Assembly (NCBI RefSeq): GCF_963921235.1
Contig: NC_086098.1
Location: forward strand, 117,862,001 to 117,926,000
Direction: 5' to 3'
DNA from: Mobula hypostoma
Taxonomy: Eukaryota
DNA: 64,000 bases
Part shown: positions 1 through 10,321 of the stretch, one piece after another
Layout: every line of letters begins with the position of its first letter
How positions within the stretch are numbered: position 1 is the first letter of the stretch
Program-made: the position numbers and the translations under genes
The notes under the pieces: model-generated
The model's input: the letters and a program-made list of their open reading frames with translations, nothing else
The model's database searches: none
Told to the model about the DNA's origin: nothing

Positions 1-749
1 CACTGGAAATACATTCATTACCATTGGTCAGGTGTCAGATCTCAGTGGGAGAGCATTTTGGAGACAGTAATAATCTTATCTCCTTTACAATAGCATTGGA
101 CAGCGATAGGAACATAAGTCAGAAAAGCATTTAATTGGAGTAAGGGGAACTATAAGGCTATCAGGCAGGAAATTGGAGGCTTAAATTGGAAACAGATATT
201 CTCAGGGAAAAGTACAGAAGAAATGTGGCTAATGTTCAGGGGAAATTTATGTGGAATTCTGCATAGGTACGTTCCAATGAGACAGGGAAGTTATGGTAGG
301 GTACAGGAACCGTGGTGTACAAAGGCTGTAATAAATCTAGTCAACAAAAGCTTACAAAAAGTTCAGAAAGCTAGGTAATGTTAGAGATCTAGAAGATTAT
401 AAGGCTAACAGGAAGGAGCTTAAATTTGGAGAGCCAGAAGGGGCCATGAGAAGGCCTTGGTGGGCAGGATTAAGGAAAACCCCAAGGCATTCTACAAGGA
501 TGTGAAGAGCAAGAGGATAAGACGTGAGAGAATAGGACCAATCAAGTGTGACAGTGGGAAAGTGTGTCTGGAACTGGAGGAAATAGCAGAGATACTTAAT
601 GAATACTTTACTTCAGTATTCACTATGGAAAAGGATTTCAGTGATTGTAGCAAACACAAGGAATTCTGCAGATGCTGAAAATTCAAGCAACACACATCAA
701 AGTTGCTGGTGAACGCAGCAGGCCAGGCAGCATCTCTAAGAAGAGGTAC

Positions 750-785
750 AGTCGACGTTTCAGGCCGAGACCCTTCGTCAGGACC
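750..785 (-). ncRNA. Minimal type I hammerhead ribozyme motif (inverted copy)
   Basis: Minus strand reads GGTC-CTGACGA-AGG GTCTCGG CCT-GAAA-CGTC^-GACT. Confidence 0.72.
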
Positions 786-792
786 CTTCAAC

Positions 793-828
793 AGTCCTGA
801 CGAAGGGTCTCGGCCCGAAACGTCGACT
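793..828 (+). ncRNA. Minimal type I hammerhead ribozyme motif
   Basis: AGTC-CTGACGA-A-GGG TCTCGG CCC-GAAA-CGTC^-GACT: CUGANGA and GAAA cores, stem II GGG/CCC, stem I AGTC/GACT, GUC cleavage triplet (cut after 824), palindromic ACGT in place of a full stem III. Confidence 0.75.
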
Positions 829-2968
829 ATACCTCTTCCTAGAGATGCTGCCTGGCTTGCTGCGTTCACCAGCAACTTTGATGTGTGTTGTCAGTGATGG
901 TAGTGATGACTTGCAGCGGACTGAAAAGCCTGAGCATGGAGATATTAAGAAAGGGTGTGCTGGAGTTTTTGGAAAGCATCAAGTTGGATAAGTCACCGGG
1001 ACCGGACAAGATGTACCCCAGGCTACTGAAGGAGGAGATTGCTGAGCCCCTGGCAATGATCTTTGTATCATCAATGGGGATGGGAGCGGTTCCAGAGGAT
1101 TGCAGATGTTGTTCCTTTATTCAAGAAAGGGAGTGGAGATAGCCCAGAACATTACAGACCAGTGAGTCTTACTTCAGTGGTTGGTAAATTGATGGAGAAG
1201 ATCCTGAGGCGCAGGATTGATGAACATTTGGAGAGGCATAATATGATTAGGAATAGTCAGCATGGCTTTGTCAAGGGCAGGTCATGCCTTATGAGCCTGA
1301 TTGAATTTTGAGGATGTGACTAAATACATTGATGAAGGAAGAGCAGTAGATGTAGTGTATATGGATTTCAGCAAGGCATTTGATAAGGTTCCCCATGCAA
1401 GGCTTATTGAGAAAGTAAGGAGGCATGGGATCCAAAGGGACATTGCTTTGTGGATCCAGAACTGGCTTGCCCACAGAAGGCAAAGAGTGGTTGTAGACAG
1501 GTCATATTCTGCATGGAGGTCGGTGACCAGTGGTGTGCCTCAGGGATCTGTTCTGGGACCCTTACTCTTCATGATTTTTATAAATGACCTGGATGAGGAA
1601 GTGGAGGGATGGGTTAGTAAGTTTGCTGATGACACAAAGGTTGGAGGTGTTGTGGATAGTGTGGAAGGCTGTAAGAGGTTACAGCTGGACATTGATAGGA
1701 TGCAAAACTGGGCTGAGAAGTGGCAGATGGAGTTCAACCCAGTAAGTGTGAGGTGGTTCATTTTGGTGGGTCAAATATGATGGCAGAATATAGTATTAAT
1801 GGTAAGACTCTTGGCAGTGTGGAGGATCAGAGGGATCTTGGGGTCCGAGTCCATAGGACGCTCAAAGCAGTTGCATGGGTTGACTCTGTGGTTAAGGCGG
1901 CGTACGGTGTATTGGCCTTCATCAATCGTGGAATTGAATTTAGGAGCCGAGAGGTAATGTTGCAGCTATACAGGACCCTGGTCAGACCCCACTTGGGAGT
2001 ACTGTGCTCAGTTCTGGTCGCCACACTATAGGAAGGACGTGGAAGCCATGGAAAGGGTGCAGAGGAGATTTACAAGGATGTTGCCTGGATTGGGGGGCAT
2101 GCCTTATGAGAATAGGTTGAATGAATTCGGCCTTTTCTCCTTGAAGTGACAGAAGATGAGAGGTGATCTGATAGAGGTGTATAAGAGGCATTGATCGTGT
2201 GGATAGTCAGAGGCTTTTTCCCAGGGCTGAAATGGTTGCCACAAGAGGACACAGGTTTAAAGTGCTGGGGAGTAGGTACAGAGGAGATGCAAGTGGCAAG
2301 TTTTTTTTTTATTAAACGCAGAGTGGTGAGTGTGTGGACTGGGCTGCCGGCAACAGTGGTGGAGGCAGATATGATAGGGTCTTTTAAGAGACTTTGGATA
2401 GTTACATAGAGCTTAGAAAAATAGAGGGCTATGGGTAAGCCTAGTAATTTCTAAGGTAGGGACATGTTTGGCACAACTTTGTGGGCCAAAGGGCCTGTAT
2501 TGTGCTGTAGGTTTTCTATGTTTCTATCATCTAGAACTTAGATTCACACTGTCAAGTCCCTTAATGCTGAAGTTGACCAGACTTCTAGTAGTTGTGCAGT
2601 TTCAGCATCACCTGAACATCCACCCTGCTTAAAAACAAGGTAATCATTAGGCAATTTTGCATTTTATCAATGGGGAAGACTCGTTAACATTTGAGAATTA
2701 GGAGCAGACAGAACAAATTTGTGGCAATGAGCTGTGAAATGTTTTCACTGATAAAACAAAAGTATGTAGGCACTGAAATGCAAAGTCACAGGAAGTGACC
2801 AAAGTCATACTGTACTCATGCAGAAAACAAACCACCATTATTACTTACTGCAGAACTGGCTGATCAGATTCTACAATTGCAAGTATCAAGTCCAGGATGG
2901 AGCAGTGTGCCCTACTAGAAGACATGTTGGGCCTCATCATAACAGAGCAGGAACAAGACAGACTAGTC

Positions 2969-3056
2969 TTGTGGATAGTGTGGAGGGCTGTCAGAGGTTA
3001 CAGCTGGACATTGATAGGATGCAAAACTGGGCTGAGAAGTGGCAGATGGAGTTCAG
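2969..3056 (+). mobile_element. Isolated internal CR1 RT fragment (about 87 bp)
   Basis: Near-identical to about 1650-1736 (VDSVEGCQRLQLDIDRMQNWAEKWQMEF); no CR1 sequence on either side. Confidence 0.85.
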
Positions 3057-4094
3057 AATGGAGAAGTAAAGTGACAGAAGTTCAGTCACCCCTGCAGACA
3101 GAATAAGGTTCATGAAACATTCATTCGACCTGGGAGGTTTCCCCCTCCCAATGGGGACTGCATTGTGAAATGCCAGACACCAGACTGGAAGAAATGGAAG
3201 TTAATCACTGCTTCACCTGCCAAAGAGTGTTCAAATCCCTGACTGCATCACAGCCCTGTACGAAGTCTACTGTGGGTTGTATGGCACAACCCTCTTGAAC
3301 CCCTTCAAAAGATTTGCCTCATGAAGACAACATCCATCACCAAGGCCCCTCATCACCCAGTACACATCTTCACGTTATGACTAGAGACAAGTAGAAGAGC
3401 CTGAAGACAAACTATTTAGAAACAGCTTCTTCCCCATCAGATTCCTGAATAGCTGTGAACCTATGAACACATTCCAGTTTTGTACTGTACATTTGAAATT
3501 TAGCAATTTTATGTCCTTGCCCTACTGTTCAGAGTCACTGACAATAAACTAGATTCTGAAGGCTCCAGCATTTCCTAACCCAAAAGAGGGCAGATTACCC
3601 AAATTCTATAGCCCACCAACACCCTGCAGTAGGGAAAGCACAAGGCATGTGGAATTGCAATATCTTTACTGAAAGGAAGCCCTGTTCAAAGCAGTAACCA
3701 GAGAAGGAATGGCATTTATTGCAGCATGCTATACAGGTCAGGAAAATCTGGAGCAGAAAGTGCTGGGGAACAAATTAACGTGGTCATTGATTTACAACGT
3801 CTCTTCTAGCAAATCGGGACAGGTCAATCCACAAATTTAGCAGATCTTCCTCATAAATCTCCTCATTCTTCAGTTCCACACACTCACCACCCCTGACAAC
3901 ACATGCACTTTTCTCCTCACCCCATATAGAAATCTGCATTTGGTACACAGTACAAATTAGGGCAAGAGGATCCAAAATGGCTCAAATCTGAGCATTTGGC
4001 AGAAACTGATACTCTCACGAGAGAAGTTCGGTGAAGAATATTTGAATCAAAGCACAAACGGCTAAAGATTAAATGCTGATAAATGGGATTAGTT

Positions 4095-4400
4095 AACCAG
4101 AATTGCTGTAAATGTGTTGCTGACAATGAGACTGCTGGAGGAAGTCAACAAGTCAGGCTGTATCTATTGGGGGAAATGAACAACAGACATTTCAAGCTAA
4201 CAGCCTTCATCAGAACTGAAAAGATGACAGACGCCAGAATAAAATGGGGTGGAGGAGCATGAGCTGGCAGGTGCAGGTGAAGGGGCAAATATGGATGAGG
4301 GGAGAAGAGGGAATGATGTGGAAAAACTAAGAGGCAAAGGGCTTTAAAAAAAAGTTGGACACTGATAGGAGAGGACAGCTGACCATGCAATAAAGGGAAA
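4095..4400 (-). mobile_element. Degraded Penelope-like terminal repeat with decayed hammerhead core (4186-4213)
   Basis: Minus strand CAGTT-CTGATGA-AGGCT GTT AGCTT-GAAA-TGTC, flanked by sequence resembling the 651-890 arms (TGCTGGAGGAAGTCAACAAGTCAGGC). Confidence 0.6.
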
Positions 4401-4879
4401 ATCAAGGAACTAGGCAAAATATTTCATTCTGAATCAGGTCATGCTCCAACCTTTAGTCAGACCTCAGCTAGTGTATTGTACACGTCTGCCAGATAGGAAG
4501 CACATGACAGAACTTAAGACACTGGAGGAGGCTCTTCAGGATGTTGTCTGGACTAGCAGAGAATGGTGAAGCTAAGACTATTCTTTGGAGCAGAGACTGA
4601 GGGACTAATTGAGTGTATAAAATTGAGGGCTATGGATAGGAAATAATAATACTTTTGTGTGTCAAAGGCAAACTAAATGGGAGCAGTGTCAGTGTACGTG
4701 ATTCACAGGGGAAACTCTTTAGAGAACGGCGAGTACCTGGAATGCAGACACCGGTAAGACTGAAGTACAGGCAGGCGCCCTGCTCTGCAAGAGAACACGA
4801 CGACACATTTTGTGCTGATTTAGTCTAGTCCCGTTACCTCCCAACCCCTCCCCCACACACGTTCCATTACGGCTCATTA

Positions 4880-5830
4880 ATTAGATCTGTTTTTAGTGAA
4901 AAACAGCAAACATCCAGCACTCAAAGTACCGTACCGTAAACAGTGACCTGACCACTCGTTTCTAAACCTCGAACAGCTTCGACGCAGAGCAGGGGAAGCT
5001 GGCCGTGGGTCGGTAGGTGGCGGAGGTCCCCGCGAACACGTTGGGGTGAAGAGGACGGTGGCTATCCGAATAACGGTACAGAGCGAGGGTGCGGCCGGAA
5101 GCTGGGCCCATCCGGGGTAGGGGGCGGCGGCGGCCGGGTAGACATATACCACTGCCCGCCCGGCCACGTAACGGACCAAGGCTTCGGCCTATTCCCGACC
5201 CCGACCCCGACCCGGCCGGCCGGAGTCACGTATCCCCCACTCAGCCTCGTCGTTCAAGCAGGCGCCGCCGTACCCACGGCCCCCACCCGACCCGCGGCTA
5301 ACGGTCCCTGACCGCTACTGACCGAGGATCTCCAGCCGGCGCGCCGTGTGCGGCTGGTCGGTGTAGACCCACTCGAAGTCCTCGCGCGCCACCCGGTTGC
5401 CCATGGCTGCCGACCGCTGGAGCGCGCCTCCGTCCCGCTCCGCTCCTCGCCTTCCTCGGCGCTGACCGTTAACAGCCAGGGCGCGCCGCCCCGCCCCCAG
5501 CCGCGACGTCACAATGTCAGTCAACCCGCGGCCGCCCGCCCCCGCCTCTGACGTCACCGCCGCCGGTAACGGGGAGAGATTGCGCTCGGTCGGGGTGCTC
5601 GCAGCCTGTTCGGAACAAGACCCGGGTGTGGGGGAGCGGGGGAGCGGGGGCAACTGCACGTTGCCGGCGTTCAAGACGTGGCAGGAGTTGAAATTAAGTC
5701 TGGACGCCATCTTTATGCGGGGCAGCTTTGAGGGTCATAGGTTGAGGTTGTCATCTTTGTGCGGGGCAGCTTGGTGTGCTAACGGGTGATAACTTTTGGA
5801 CGATGAGCCTTGTAGGTGCTCGCCTGGAGT
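4880..5830 (-). promoter_or_regulatory. DEGS1 CpG island promoter with CRE and GC boxes
   Basis: CpG-dense; perfect CRE TGACGTCA 5549-5556, second CRE-like CGACGTCA 5504-5511, GC boxes at about 5486-5497 and 5531-5547. Confidence 0.8.
5323..5404 (-). CDS. DEGS1: Sphingolipid delta(4)-desaturase DES1, coding exon 1
   Basis: [27 protein letters not shown] matches the DEGS N-terminus (Gly2 myristoylation site, [11 protein letters not shown]); 82-nt exon ending G|GTCAGT (phase 1); Kozak GCAGCCATGG; DEGS1 rather than DEGS2 because of tandem synteny with FBXO28. Confidence 0.92.
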
Positions 5831-7756
5831 CGGTTTGAACGGATTGAGATGGGTAATAATAGTTACGACTCATCACAGCTGAATCCTCTAAGGACTCTGT
5901 TTATACTTCTCGCTGCCTCAGTATAATCAAACAGCGCACCACCCTGGACGTTCTCTCTTCCTCCCTCTCCCATAGGACAGTTTATACAAAAGCTTGAAAG
6001 TACGTACCACCAGACTCAATAATAGCTTCTATCCCACTGTTATCAGATTCTTAAAAAGATAAAAGACACTTGGTCTCACAAACTACCTCCATATGATCTT
6101 GCACTTCATCGTTTGCCTGCATTGCATATCGGTAGCTTTTTGACTTTATTCTATGTTTGTGTTGCTTTGCCTTATTTGAACTGAATTTGATCTGTATAAA
6201 CAGTATGCAAAACAAGCTGTTCACTGGATCTTACTCCATGTGACAATACTAACCAAATACCAATCGCCTTTTAAACGTTTATTAAGACTGAGTCTGCCAT
6301 GCATGTGAAATAGCAGGTACAGCACTACAAATCACATCAGATGTGATATGAAATTACGAACAAGTGATATAAAACATTACGACTATTGTGAACTAAGATA
6401 AGCCTCTGCCTTGTACTGTTTGAGCTTCCTATGGCTCGACTTCTCTATTTATGACCAACGCTATCCACATTTCCCCATTCTTCAAACTTCAATATTACTC
6501 ACTCTGACTCTAGATCACTTTGGACACAAGTCAGCCCAGTGATGACTCAGAATATTCACAGGAATCATTCTTGTCTGTGGACATCTACTTATAGCCAAAG
6601 ACTTCCCCAAGCCTCCTCATTTCATGATGCAGAAATCTCATAATTTGACAGACACTCTCCTGTCTTCATCCCCTTCACCTGTTAATGTTCAGCCACAGCA
6701 CGACAGAAATTGATTGGAGAAAGTCTGAGTCTCTCGACATCCAGTTTTCAATAAGGCTGTTCATGTCAGAACAATACATAATTGGGCCATGTTTGTAATT
6801 CCTGTGTTGACTGTAAATTATTGGTGAAAAAGGCAGTTGACTTTTGTGTTTTATAAACATTTCTTCAACATTTCCTCTCAGATTACAGCCAGGAAGCGTT
6901 CAGCACATATCCCCTTTGTTGTCCGCACCACTCTGAAATGGAAGTCAGTGTCAGCTTACCATGAGTTAGCGGGAGACGGTTGGCTTTACAGGCCAGGGAA
7001 TTCATGCAGTAAAACTGCAAAAACCTGACAATTTTTATAGTCGCATCATGATGTGGTAAGGCAATTGGTTAGCCTGGGGCCCACAGGAGACTTCAAGGAG
7101 TTCAGTACATTTCAGAAACCATCCTCCCTCGGTGGACTCTGTCTACACTTCTCACTGTCTCAGTCAGTATGATCAAAGAACACTCCCCCCCCCGCCTCCC
7201 ACTGACCAGAAGATACAAGAACCTGAAAGTTCAAGAACAGATGCTACAGTCAAAGTTGAGTTTATATGCCAAAGTACACGTATATACAAGTGCAATGAAA
7301 AACCTACTTGCAGCAACAACGTTCACAAGAACATAAATGAAATATAAATTCTGCACAATTTTTACAAGAAAGAGAACATTTAGAACGAAAAGTAAACCCA
7401 GTCCCTTTTCATGCAAATTTGCCAAGATGGTCGCGGTGTTGCTAAACTGTGGTGCTTAGGGTCTTGCTGGTTGGCTCGTTCAGGAATCAAGTGATTGAAG
7501 GCCAGCATTTGTTCTTGAACCTGGTGGTGTGGGACGTCAGGTTTCTATACCACCAACTCAAAAATAGCTGCAAAAGGATGTCATAACTGAGATACTGAGA
7601 AGTGAGAGAGACTTGGCCAAGTTCAAGCCCACCTTCTCAAGGGCAGTCAGGAATGGACAATAAATTCTGCCCTCTCTAGTCATGCCGAACAGATTTTTAA
7701 AAAACTTCTACCCACTTGTTGGTTTATTTCTAATTTGCATTTTATTCCAGCATTAT

Positions 7757-10321
7757 ACTACCTAACAGTAGTAGTGAGGTTGGGGATGGCATGAAACAGG
7801 AAATTAGAAATGCGTGCAATAAAGGAACAGCAGTTATAATGGGTGACTTCAATCTACATATAAATTGGGTGAACCAAATTGGTAAGGGTGCTGAGGAAGA
7901 GGATTTCTTGGAATGTATGCAGGATGGTTTTCTGAACCAACATGTCAAGGAACCAACTAGAGAGCAGGCCATTCTAGACTGGGTATTGAGCAATGAGGAA
8001 GGATTAGTTAGCAATCTTGTCGTGCGAGGCCCCTTAAGTTAGAGTGACCATAATATGCTGGAATCCTTCATTAAGATGGAGAGTGACATAGTTAATTCAG
8101 AAACAAAGGTTCTGAACTTAAAGAAGGGTAACTTTGAAGGTATGAGACGTGAATTAGCTAAGATAGACTGGCAAATGATACTTAAAGGGTTGACGGTGGA
8201 TATGCAATGGAAAGCATTTAAAGATCGCATGGATGAACTACAACAATTGTTCGTCCCAGTTTGGCAAAAGAATAAACCAGGGAAGGTAGTGCACCTGTGG
8301 CTGACAAAGGAAATTAGGGATAGTATCAATTTCAAAGAAGAAACATACAAATTAGCCAGAAAAAGCAGCACACCTGAGGACTGGGAGAAATTCAGAGTCC
8401 AGCAGAGGAGGACAAGGGGCTTAATTAGGAAAAGGAAAACAGATTATGAGAGAAAGTTGGCAGGGAACATAAAAACTGACTGTAAAAGCTTTTATAGATA
8501 TGTGAAAAGAAGAAGATTGGTTAAGACAAATGTGGGTCCCTTACAGTCAGAAACAGATGAATTGATCATGGGGAACAAGGACATGGCAGACCAATTGAAT
8601 AACTACTTTTGTTCTGTCTTCACTAAGGTGGACATAAATAATCTTCCGGAAATAGTAGAGGACCGAGGGTCTAGTGAGATGGAGGAACTGAGGGAAATAC
8701 ATGTTAGTAGGGAAGTGGTATTAGGTAAATTGAAGGCAGATAAATCCCCAGGGCCAGATGGTTTGCATCCCAGAGTGCTTAAGCAAGTAGCCCAAGAAAT
8801 AGTGGATGCATTAGTGATAATTTTTCAAAACTCTTTAGGTTCTGGATTAGTTCCTGAGGATTGGAGGGTGGCTAATATAACCCCGCTTTTTGAAAAAGGA
8901 GGGAGAGAGAAACCAGGGAATTATAGACTGGTTAGCCTAACATCGGTGGTGGGGAAGATGCTGGAGTCAGTTATCAAAGATGTGATAACAGCACATTTGG
9001 AAAGTGGTGAAATCATTGGACAAAGTCAGCATGGATTTGTGAAAGGAAAATCATGTCTGAGGAATCTCATAGAATTTTTTGAGGATGTAACTAGTAGAGT
9101 GGATAGGGGAGAACCAGTGGATGTGGTATATTTGGATTTTCAAAAGGCTTTTGACAAGGTCCCACACAGGAGATTAGTGTGCAAACTTAAAGCACACGGT
9201 ATTGGGGGTATGGTATTGATGTGGAGAGAGAATTGGTTGGCAGACAGGAAGCAAAGAGTGGGAATAAACAGGACCATTTCAGAATGGCAGGCAGTGACTA
9301 GTGGGGTACCACAAGGCTCAGTGCAGGGACCCCAGATGTTTACTATATATATTAATGACTTAGATGAGGGAATTAAATGCAGCATCACCAAGTTGGCGGA
9401 TGACACGAAGCTGGCGGCAGTGTTAGCTGTGAGGAGGATGCTAAGAGGATGCAGGGTGACTTGGATAGGTTGGGTGAGTGGGCAAATTCATGACAGATGC
9501 AATTTAATGTGGATAAATGTGAGGTTATCCACTTTGGTGGCAATAACAGGAAAACAGATTATTATCTGAATCATGGCCAATTAGGAAAAGGGGAGGTGAA
9601 ACAAGACCTGGGTGTCATTGTACACCAGTCATTGAAAGTGGGCATGCAGGTACAGCAGGCGGTGAAAAAGGCGAATGGTTTGCTGGCATTCATTGCAAGA
9701 GGATTCGAGTACAGGAGCAGGGAGGTACTACTGCAGTTGTACAAGGCCTTGGTGAGACCACACCTGGAGTACTGTGTGCAGTTTTGGTCCCTTAATCTGA
9801 GGAAGGACATTCTTGCCATAGAGAGAGTGCAAAGAAGGTTCACCAGATTGATTCCTGGGATGGCAGGACTTTCATATGATGAAAGACTGGATCGACTAGG
9901 CTTATACTCACTGGAATTTAGAAGATTGAGGGGGGATCTTATTGAAACATATAAAATTCTAAATGGATTGGACAGGCTAGATGCAGGAAGATTGTTCCCG
10001 ATGTTGGGGAAGTCCAGAACGAGGGGTCACAGTTTAAGGATAAAGGGGAAGCCTTTTAGGACCGAGATGAGGAAAAACTTTTTCACACAGAGAGTGGTGA
10101 ATCTGTGGAATTCTCTGCCACAGGAAACAGTTGAGGCCAGTTCATTGGCTATATTTAAGTGGGAGTTAGGTATGGCCCTTGTGGCTAAAGGGATCAGGGG
10201 GTATGGAGAGAAGGCAGGTACAGGGTTCTGAGTTGGATGATTAGCCATGATCATACTGAATGGCGTTGCAGGCTGGAAGGGCCGAATGGCCTACTCCTGC
10301 ACCTATTTTCTATGTTTCTAT
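7757..10321 (+). mobile_element. CR1 LINE, family B, 5'-truncated within the endonuclease domain, frameshifted
   Basis: VIMGDFN / PTREQAILDWVL / SDH endonuclease motifs, RT ORFs 8055-9569 and 9497-10231, 3' UTR ending TTTTCTATGTTTCTAT. Confidence 0.95.

What the first reader, a model, noticed from the sequence alone, without database searches (positions are those of the whole stretch)
638..903. 240-bp mobile palindrome carrying two inverted hammerhead ribozymes inside DEGS1 intron 1
Seen: a 240-bp insert (651-890) with a 13-bp TSD splits a CR1. It is almost entirely a 97-bp inverted repeat, and each arm has a full CUGACGA...GAAA-C-GUC hammerhead core with a pairable stem I (AGTC/GACT) and stem II. 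Established: Penelope-like retroelements carry minimal type I hammerheads that lack a stable stem III and cleave as dimers (here via palindromic ACGU), and they can have inverted terminal repeats. Inference: this is either an extreme truncation of a Penelope element or a self-contained non-coding retrozyme/MITE-like unit. Any transcript across it, including DEGS1 pre-mRNA, holds a ribozyme together with its own antisense, so the long hairpin would switch cleavage off and create a dsRNA substrate (ADAR/Dicer). That could make intronic insertion tolerable.
Basis: partly seen in the sequence, partly recalled or inferred. Interest (0 to 1): 0.8.

Follow-up and report, generated by a model that had tools for sequence, protein, structure and literature searches.

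The report
Truncated fold-back Penelope retrotransposon insertion
The 240-bp palindrome is one very short, two-armed insertion of an abundant Penelope-like jumping gene, carrying that element's usual small hammerhead motif on each arm; it is an ordinary by-product of how these elements integrate, not a new kind of mobile ribozyme.

Summary
Window 651-890 is a 240-bp insert with a 13-bp target duplication, inside a LINE reverse-transcriptase fragment. It lies in the intron after the first coding exon of a DEGS-family gene. It holds a 97-nt inverted repeat with a complete minimal hammerhead (min-HHR) motif on each strand.

It is the 3' end of a 3.5-kb Penelope-like element (PLE; RT plus GIY-YIG endonuclease). 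That element's 27-nt tail word occurs 47,492 times in this 3.5-Gb genome. One arm carries the PLE's 37-nt "tail" and the other lacks it. Larger PLE insertions here show the same head-to-head, one-tailed layout, which is published for PLEs (reverse transcription from two start sites, both target strands extended).

Such mini-palindromes are common: at least 1,517 have both arms reaching the hammerhead. Their junctions differ, the two arms always share the same PLE subfamily markers, and short and long insertions carry the same subfamilies. They are therefore mostly independent by-products, not a self-contained retrozyme- or MITE-like family.

About half of 60 randomly sampled insertions end within about 35 nt of the hammerhead's 5' edge. 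This hot zone is unexplained and is the only mildly new point. Ribozyme activity, editing and dicing could not be tested. The scan has already met this structure elsewhere in this genome.

The parts
638..650 (.). Left copy of the 13-bp target-site duplication (TCAGTGATTGTAG)
   Evidence: A paralogous LINE copy, L090 678-690, has the sequence once.
651..687 (-). PLE 'tail': the last 37 nt of the element (PLE 2988-3024), present on this arm only
   Evidence: BLAST to the PLE copy in L031. The tail 27-mer occurs 47,492 times in the genome. The optional 30-40 nt tail of PLEs is described in PMC11167929 and PMC8557442.
688..784 (-). Tail-bearing arm (arm T): PLE 2891-2987, sense on the minus strand, which is also the DEGS gene strand
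   Evidence: 96.3% identity over 134 nt together with the tail.
750..785 (-). Min-HHR motif of arm T: GGUC-CUGACGA-A-GGGUCUCGGCCU-GAAA-CG-UC|GACU, with a G10.1-U11.1 pair; predicted cut after C754
785..793 (.). 9-nt spacer at the head-to-head junction (CCCTTCAAC), partly PLE sequence just 5' of the hammerhead
   Evidence: Junctions differ between copies.
794..890 (+). Tail-less inverted arm (arm N): PLE ~2890-2987, ending at the PLE's internal reverse-transcription start site
   Evidence: Tail-less ends at the same place are seen in large PLE insertions.
793..828 (+). Min-HHR motif of arm N: AGUC-CUGACGA-A-GGGUCUCGGCCC-GAAA-CG-UC|GACU, with a G10.1-C11.1 pair; predicted cut after C824
891..903 (.). 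Right copy of the target-site duplication (TCAGTGATGGTAG; one mismatch)
1..1800 (+). Decayed LINE ORF2 fragment interrupted by the insert (host of the insertion, not part of the element)
   Evidence: Translation; RVT_1 E=2.2e-20.
5318..5420 (-). First coding exon of a DEGS-family gene (context: the insert lies in the following intron)
   Evidence: Lipid_DES match at window 5324-5386; open frame ending ...[31 protein letters not shown].

Best explanation
Window 651-890 is a single, extremely 5'-truncated insertion of a recently active Penelope-like element. The steps below are marked as shown or inferred.

1. Shown: the element's endonuclease site is flanked by a 13-bp duplication inside a LINE fragment.
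2. Inferred from published in-vitro work on an Anolis PLE: both nicked target strands primed reverse transcription on PLE RNA. One priming started at the very 3' end and gave the 37-nt tail. The other started at the internal site 37 nt upstream and gave the tail-less arm.
3. Shown as structure, mechanism inferred: both cDNAs stopped about 100-135 nt in, just 5' of the element's minimal hammerhead, and were joined head to head.

The result is a 97-nt inverted repeat that happens to include the whole hammerhead motif on each strand. It needs no function of its own. In DEGS pre-mRNA (minus strand) it would fold into a near-perfect 97-bp hairpin that out-competes the hammerhead fold.
For: The parent element is a PLE.
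- It has a 3,024-nt copy plus a 484-nt 5' region in tandem copies, with >8,000 first-look candidates at 96-97% identity.
- Its ORF carries PKIHK..GRPIVS, RYIDD, YYKPTDSH and CYTCPY..GLLYIGET.
- Atlas neighbours are HTH_animal+RVT_1+DUF8422+GIY-YIG at 0.96. Pfam gives RVT_1 2e-5 and GIY-YIG 1.4e-4 in the same ORF.

The window's arms match the PLE's end.
- They equal PLE 2891-3024 and 2890-2987 at 96% identity.

Large insertions have the same layout.
- They show a tailed sense copy joined to a tail-less inverted copy, with random junctions.
- In 60 random tail-bearing insertions, about half carry an abutting inverted copy, and nearly all of those that reach the element's 3' part end tail-less at 2978-3000.

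The literature describes this layout.
- An inverted 5'-truncated copy and a 30-40 bp tail at one end are reported in PMC8557442.
- Two RT start sites bracketing the tail, and nicking and extension of both strands, are reported in PMC11167929.

The mini-palindromes arise independently.
- There are 1,517 palindrome centres within 20 nt of the hammerhead, with many different spacers.
- Subfamily markers agree between arms in 15/15 cases, and short and long insertions share haplotypes.
- Each copy has its own 10-15 bp TSD.
- The same LINE site was hit 8 more times, with the tail on the opposite side and with different junctions.
Against: - All 40 best genome matches are full-length 240+/-5 bp copies.
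- 24 places share the exact junction TCAGGACCCTTCGTTAGTCCTGA, which has a 1-nt deletion relative to the PLE. Some limited re-copying of a palindromic unit is therefore possible.
- Priming on both strands is inferred from another species' enzyme. No RNA or biochemical data exist for this genome: the only sequencing runs available were assembled contigs of uncertain type.
- The clustering of cDNA ends at the hammerhead is not predicted by the simple model.
Confidence: 0.8

Rival explanations
1. The palindrome is a self-propagating non-autonomous element. A palindromic (or junction-containing) transcript is itself the template. PLE enzymes copy it as a unit, and the two cDNAs re-anneal through the arms to regenerate the same 240-bp structure.
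For: 40/40 best hits are full-length with their own TSDs at 90-95% identity. 24 exact copies share one junction with a shared 1-nt deletion. Another junction, GCAGCA|CCTCTTCC, recurs many times among 269 palindromes. An earlier follow-up in this scan (s1-141886) also read a 242-bp copy as re-copied as a unit.
Against: Junctions are highly heterogeneous in unbiased lists. Copies with the same junction carry different PLE subfamily markers, and in both arms (L026, L017, L021 versus the rest). That requires repeated de novo formation or recombination. Short and long insertions draw on the same haplotypes. Many short insertions lose part of the hammerhead or have no inverted arm at all.
Confidence: 0.12
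2. The structure arose from a single-strand priming event followed by snap-back. One cDNA folded back on itself near the hammerhead and copied itself, rather than two independent priming events on the two target strands.
For: The two arms always carry identical subfamily markers. Short palindromic microhomologies occur at several junctions, for example GGACTAGTCC.
Against: Snap-back copying should reproduce the tail on both arms, yet the inverted arms sampled end tail-less, at about 2978-3000. This is the position where simple tail-less PLE ends and the published internal RT start lie (PMC11167929). The same target site is used with the tail on either side and the same 12-13 bp TSD, as expected for two symmetric nicks.
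Confidence: 0.08
3. It is a retrozyme- or viroid-like unit whose hammerheads of both polarities process a circular or rod-like RNA.
For: A hammerhead motif lies on each strand, and the predicted fold is rod-like.
Against: There is no tandem repetition and no pair of same-polarity ribozymes to excise a unit. Ends are defined by a TSD, a one-sided PLE tail and an internal RT start site. Many sister copies have truncated or missing hammerheads. Published min-HHRs cleave poorly even as dimers (PMC4209133).
Confidence: 0.02
4. The hairpin has been co-opted by the host gene as a dsRNA, editing or small-RNA regulatory element in DEGS pre-mRNA.
For: Only the very stable predicted hairpin supports this (-207.7 kcal/mol on the gene strand, z = -29).
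Against: It is one of thousands of equivalent neutral-looking copies. The arms already differ at 4 of 97 positions, mostly CpG decay. No conservation or expression data are available.
Confidence: 0.03

Closest known systems
Penelope-like element insertions with an adjacent inverted 5'-truncated copy and a one-sided 30-40 bp 'tail' (Evgen'ev & Arkhipova 2005; Craig et al. 2021, PMC8557442; Frangieh et al. 2024, PMC11167929)
   Same: The TSD is variable in length. The two copies are head to head. The 37-nt tail is on one end only, and the other end lies at the internal RT start. The hammerhead sits in the terminal repeat region. The parent encodes RT plus GIY-YIG.
   Different: This is an extreme case: both arms keep only about 100-135 nt, so the insert is almost entirely palindrome. 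In this genome such minimal forms make up roughly half of sampled insertions and cluster at the hammerhead. I did not find that clustering described in the papers read.
Minimal hammerhead ribozymes (min-HHR) of metazoan PLEs (Cervera & de la Pena 2014, PMC4209133)
   Same: [quoted passage not shown] That paper also reports pairs of motifs on opposite strands 100-700 bp apart.
   Different: Helix II is short here (4 bp plus tetraloop, against 6-8 bp in the trematode and fly examples). The currently dominant PLE variant has G-U at 10.1-11.1. The copy number (50,271 exact 31-mers) is higher than the 4,000-9,000 reported for coelacanth and Xenopus.
Animal non-LTR retrozymes (Cervera & de la Pena 2020, PMC7229834; Li et al. 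2026 preprint, 10.64898/2026.07.22.740005)
   Same: They carry a type I hammerhead, are non-coding and PLE-related, and are proposed to be mobilised by PLE enzymes.
   Different: Retrozymes are same-polarity tandem repeats that yield circular RNAs. This insert is a dispersed single inverted repeat with one sense ribozyme per transcript. The preprint reports retrozymes excluded from introns, whereas this copy is intronic.
MITEs (miniature inverted-repeat DNA transposons)
   Same: Small size, inverted-repeat shape, high copy number and intronic location.
   Different: The TSD length varies (about 8-16 bp). The ends are asymmetric (tail on one side), and the arms are variably truncated at both inner and outer ends. 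The origin is the 3' end of a retroelement. All of this points to reverse transcription, not cut-and-paste.

Membership tests
Penelope-like element (parent of the insert) | A single ORF with a PLE-type RT followed by a GIY-YIG endonuclease | tested here: met
   Motifs in the L052 ORF. GIY-YIG E=1.4e-4 (22.5 bits against a 22.6 cut-off) and RVT_1 in the L039 ORF. RVT_1 2e-5. Atlas neighbours with HTH_animal/RVT_1/DUF8422/GIY-YIG at 0.96. All Pfam scores are at or below the curated cut-offs.
Penelope-like element (parent of the insert) | Partial tandem copies (pseudo-LTR) and/or adjacent inverted 5'-truncated copies | tested here: met
   Tandem copies in L047, L052, L053. Inverted copies in L034-L036, L039, L041, L043, L045 and in about half of 60 random insertions.
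Penelope-like element (parent of the insert) | An optional 30-40 bp tail at one end; variable-length TSD | tested here: met
   The 37-nt tail is on one arm only in the window and in sister copies. TSDs are about 8-16 bp.
Min-HHR of metazoan PLEs (Cervera & de la Pena 2014) | Catalytic boxes CUGANGA...GAAA, and H17 after U16.1 | tested here: met
   Present on both strands.
Min-HHR of metazoan PLEs (Cervera & de la Pena 2014) | [quoted passage not shown] | tested here: met
   A804 is the extra nucleotide. G805-C816 pair on the + strand. The minus-strand copy and the dominant PLE variant have G-U instead; part of this may be CpG decay.
Min-HHR of metazoan PLEs (Cervera & de la Pena 2014) | No helix III hairpin; palindromic 15.2-16.2 that allows a dimer | tested here: met
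   GAAA-CG-UC gives the ACGU palindrome. The homodimer cofold is -33.7 against 2 x -12.7 kcal/mol for monomers.
Min-HHR of metazoan PLEs (Cervera & de la Pena 2014) | Motif retained in diverged lineages | tested here: inconclusive
   The motif is recognisable in about 10 diverged PLE 3' ends in this genome. These are decayed copies, and no clean compensatory changes were established.
Min-HHR of metazoan PLEs (Cervera & de la Pena 2014) | Self-cleavage | not testable with these tools
   Only assembled contigs were available. The literature reports weak in-vitro activity even for dimers (PMC4209133) and no cleavage-site read ends for the Anolis PLE (PMC11167929).
Rfam hammerhead families (types I/II/III, HH9, HH10) | A score against the covariance models | tested here: not met
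   No hammerhead hit at E<=10 on the whole hairpin or on a single arm. The only hits were sub-threshold miRNA-hairpin models.
Retrozyme | Same-polarity hammerheads in direct or tandem repeats that delimit a circularisable unit | tested here: not met
   The two motifs are on opposite strands of one inverted repeat, and there is no tandem array.
MITE | Fixed-length TSD and symmetric terminal inverted repeats of a DNA transposon | tested here: not met
   TSD length varies, a 37-nt unique tail sits on one side, and the outer end of the other arm is ragged.

The most novel reading that the evidence does not exclude
The pile-up of insertion 5' ends within about 25 nt of the hammerhead's 5' edge may reflect a defined 5' end of a short PLE RNA. 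That end lies next to a pyrimidine-tract+CAG motif, conserved in diverged PLE lineages, that directly abuts helix I. Such an RNA end could come from an initiator-type start site or from splice-related processing at that motif. If so, the last ~135 nt (hammerhead, RT entry sites, tail) would be a self-sufficient, SINE-like retrotransposable module. The hammerhead region would then mark the template boundary, which would give the long-unexplained PLE hammerhead a role in template definition.
Probability: 0.22. Interest if true: 0.55.

Novelty: new member of a known kind. Interest (0 to 1): 0.27.

Why it matters
As an individual locus it matters little: it is one of tens of thousands of Penelope fragments, and nothing suggests the host gene uses it. 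At family level the genome is a rich natural record of PLE integration. It holds more than 47,000 tailed ends, more than 50,000 exact hammerhead motifs, thousands of two-armed mini-insertions, a strong truncation hot zone at the hammerhead, and a roughly 500-fold insertion hot spot in one LINE site used in both orientations. These patterns agree with the recent in-vitro model (two RT start sites, both strands primed). They could be mined to ask what defines the template's 5' end and what the PLE hammerhead is for.

Tried and rejected
- Rfam scans of the hairpin and of one arm gave no hammerhead hit. The sub-threshold MIR6136, mir-5681 and other hits reflect the hairpin shape.
- Pfam on the broken ORFs of the first PLE copy gave nothing. 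A search of PDB sequences gave nothing.
- Sequencing runs: all holders are coded Logan contigs and none is on record as RNA. Laying four of them gave only relative k-mer depth: the last ~135 nt of the PLE is 5-8x deeper than the next 130 nt. It gave no read starts or ends and no usable splice or cleavage joints. Expression, in-vivo cleavage and A-to-I editing therefore could not be tested.
- The idea that the hot zone equals the hammerhead cut site was rejected as the main cause. The predicted cut is at PLE 2921/2922, while the main peak of ends is at 2875-2899. Only a minor cluster lies at 2923-2934.
- The idea of a short intron ending at the CAG next to helix I, as in D. virilis Penelope, remains open. 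No convincing GT donor was found in the 200 nt upstream.
- The idea that upstream tandem copies start at the hot zone, as a start site there would predict, was not supported. In three tandem cases the upstream copies start at 2761, 2435 and 2081.
The random sample therefore stayed at 60.
Full report
**Observation**

- A 13-nt direct repeat (638-650 / 891-903, one mismatch) brackets a 240-bp insert.
- Positions 688-784 and 794-890 form a 97-nt inverted repeat, 96% complementary, with a 9-nt spacer.
- The 31-nt string CTGACGAAGGGTCTCGGCCCGAAACGTCGAC occurs at 797-827 (+) and, with one mismatch, at 751-781 (-). None of 100 shuffles gave a match.
- A paralogous copy of the host repeat (L090 678-690) carries the 13-mer once and uninterrupted. 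The target duplication and the insert boundaries are therefore real.
- The host repeat is a decayed LINE ORF2 (RVT_1 E=2.2e-20). Its clade was not tested.
- The first coding exon of a DEGS-family gene (…[19 protein letters not shown]…) lies at about 5318-5420 on the minus strand. No later DEGS exon lies between it and the window start. The insert therefore sits in the following intron, with the tail-bearing arm in the sense of the gene.

**What it comes from**

A genome search with the insert returned 4,004 first-look candidates. All 40 scored hits were full-length copies at 90-95% identity, and each has its own TSD of about 10-15 bp.

One locus also held a 'half copy' that runs on into a longer repeat. 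That repeat is a high-copy element whose copies are 96-97% identical. It is 3,024 nt long plus a further 484 nt seen at the 5' side in tandem copies.

Natural copies carry an ORF of up to about 900 codons with the following features.
- Motifs PKIHK…GRPIVS, RYIDD, YYKPTDSH and CYTCPY…GLLYIGET.
- Weak Pfam RVT_1 (2e-5) and GIY-YIG (1.4e-4, at the cut-off).
- Protein-atlas neighbours at 0.96 that are HTH_animal/RVT_1/DUF8422/GIY-YIG clusters.

Together with the tandem 'pseudo-LTR' arrangement, this identifies a canonical endonuclease-bearing Penelope-like element (PLE). The window's arms are PLE 2891-3024 (minus strand) and 2890-2987 (plus strand), both 96% identical to the PLE.

**Anatomy in PLE terms**

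The unique 37 nt at 651-687 are the last 37 nt of the PLE. Larger insertions of the same element typically consist of two parts:
- a 5'-truncated sense copy that keeps these 37 nt;
- a head-to-head inverted copy that lacks them, joined at arbitrary positions.

In 60 insertions taken in chromosomal order, about half carry an abutting inverted copy. Nearly all of those that reach the element's 3' part end tail-less, at 2978-3000.

This matches the published description of PLEs. Craig et al. 2021 (PMC8557442) report an adjacent inverted 5'-truncated copy and a 30-40 bp tail at only one end. Frangieh et al. 2024 (PMC11167929) report that reverse transcription starts at two sites that bracket the tail, and that the enzyme nicks and extends both target strands. 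The window insert is the minimal version of that product.

**Family or by-product?**

Unbiased evidence nevertheless argues against a self-contained family.
- The pattern 'antisense hammerhead start, 0-20 nt, sense hammerhead start' occurs at 1,517 places (control 0), with many different spacers.
- The commonest junction among the close matches, a close variant of the window's own, occurs only 24 times exactly.
- Three PLE subfamily haplotypes (TGTACC…TAGAG, TGCACC…TACAG, TGCGCC…TATAG) occur among palindromes, even among those with the same junction type.
- In the random sample the two arms agree in 15 of 15 cases, and short and long insertions share the same haplotypes.
- Many short insertions have no inverted arm, or have arms that end inside the hammerhead.

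Each palindrome is therefore best read as made afresh from one PLE RNA species. Small clusters with identical junctions leave room for limited re-copying.

**A hot zone**

Among the 60 random tail-bearing insertions, the sense copy starts at the following PLE positions.

| PLE start position | Insertions |
|---|---|
| 2931-2990 | 7 |
| 2861-2930 | 29 |
| 2791-2860 | 4 |
| 2500-2790 | 6 |
| further upstream | 14 |

- Pooled arm ends peak at 2875-2899. This is at the boundary between a pyrimidine tract + CAG(TTAG) and helix I of the hammerhead. The hammerhead spans 2890-2925, with the predicted cut after 2921.
- Pattern counts agree. There are 1,517 palindrome centres at the hammerhead edge, 269 centres 35-55 nt downstream, and 7 centres 30 nt upstream.
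- Contig k-mer depth over the last ~135 nt is 5-8 times that of the next 130 nt in four runs.
- The cause is not established.
- In about eight diverged PLE lineages of this genome a Y-rich tract + CAG directly abuts TCCTGAYGA.
- This resembles the D. virilis Penelope intron, whose 3' end maps to the 5' end of helix I (PMC4209133, PMC2377424). It also fits an initiator consensus. I found no convincing donor site and had no RNA-end data.

**The hammerhead**

Both arms satisfy the min-HHR description of Cervera & de la Peña 2014.
- The catalytic boxes are present.
- An extra A lies between positions 9 and 10.1.
- Positions 10.1-11.1 form G-C on the plus strand and G-U on the minus strand.
- Helix II is 4 bp.
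- There is no helix III; instead the ACGU palindrome could form one in a dimer.
- Helix I is 4 bp.

The exact 31-mer (allowing Y at two CpG sites) occurs 50,271 times in the genome. Rfam's hammerhead models do not detect it. Activity cannot be judged here. The literature reports weak cleavage even for dimers, and no evidence of cleavage in vivo for the Anolis element.

Any transcript that spans both arms is predicted to form the long hairpin: -194.5 kcal/mol on the plus strand and -207.7 on the minus strand (z = -27 and -29), against -12.7 for a single-arm fold. ADAR or Dicer processing is untested.

**Target site**

The same nucleotide position of the host LINE family carries PLE insertions in 8 other copies. 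All 8 have the tail on the opposite side to the window, and all have different internal junctions. This compares with 1,188 empty copies. About 0.016 occupied sites would be expected from the genome-wide density of tailed ends. The endonuclease therefore has a marked sequence preference. Use of the same 12-13 bp stagger in both orientations fits symmetric nicking.

**Verdict**

The 'truncated Penelope' reading is supported, and the 'independent retrozyme/MITE-like unit' reading is not. The kind is known (PLE inverted, tailed insertions carrying min-HHRs), and the scan had already met and followed up equivalent copies in this genome. The truncation hot zone at the hammerhead and the LINE-site hot spot are modest additions that would need RNA-end and biochemical data to interpret.

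Noticed in passing
window 638-650 and paralogous LINE copies (L057, L094-L100): One exact position in this LINE family is a PLE insertion hot spot. 9 copies are occupied: 8 have the tail on the side opposite to the window's, and all have different junctions. 1,188 copies are empty, against about 0.016 occupied expected by chance. The same 12-13 bp TSD is used in both orientations.
   Followed up: yes
PLE 2875-2891 (L031 minus strand); diverged copies in L007, L012, L023, L025, L036, L048, L082: A pyrimidine tract followed by CAG directly abuts helix I (…YYYCAG|TCCTGAYGA) in about eight diverged PLE lineages. It could be a 3' splice site, as in D. virilis Penelope, or an initiator. It coincides with the peak of insertion 5' ends.
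   Followed up: partly
genome-wide, e.g. G000:C1:31129164-31129211: Among 269 shorter palindromes, one junction (…GGCAGCA|CCTCTTCCTAGAGATGCTGCC…) recurs many times. One arm starts 8-9 nt 3' of the predicted hammerhead cut. This is either a small re-copied lineage or a preferred joining site.
   Followed up: no
window 740-838: The Rfam models MIR6136 (56.7 bits, GA 99) and mir-5681 align with real sequence similarity (GUCGAC-GUUUC…GAAAC-GUCGAC) and not only by hairpin shape. Those 'miRNA' families might themselves derive from hammerhead-bearing inverted repeats.
   Followed up: no
L065 and L085 (G000:C1:399126-400812 and C1:1823757-1825443): Two loci share the same odd structure: sense PLE 2102-3024 joined to inverted PLE 278-~985. 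This suggests a duplicated locus or a rearranged PLE sub-lineage that was copied.
   Followed up: no
L053 3251-3510 (PLE ~2370-2630): Contig k-mer depth rises again 3-4 fold over this internal PLE segment in all four runs, with many contig break points at about PLE 2529 and 2564. Another derivative repeat may share this piece.
   Followed up: no
L026 1501-1738 and 1814-4800 (G000:C40): A 240-bp palindrome lies only 75 bp from the 3' end of a long PLE copy in the same orientation. The two carry different subfamily markers, so they are two separate insertions close together.
   Followed up: partly
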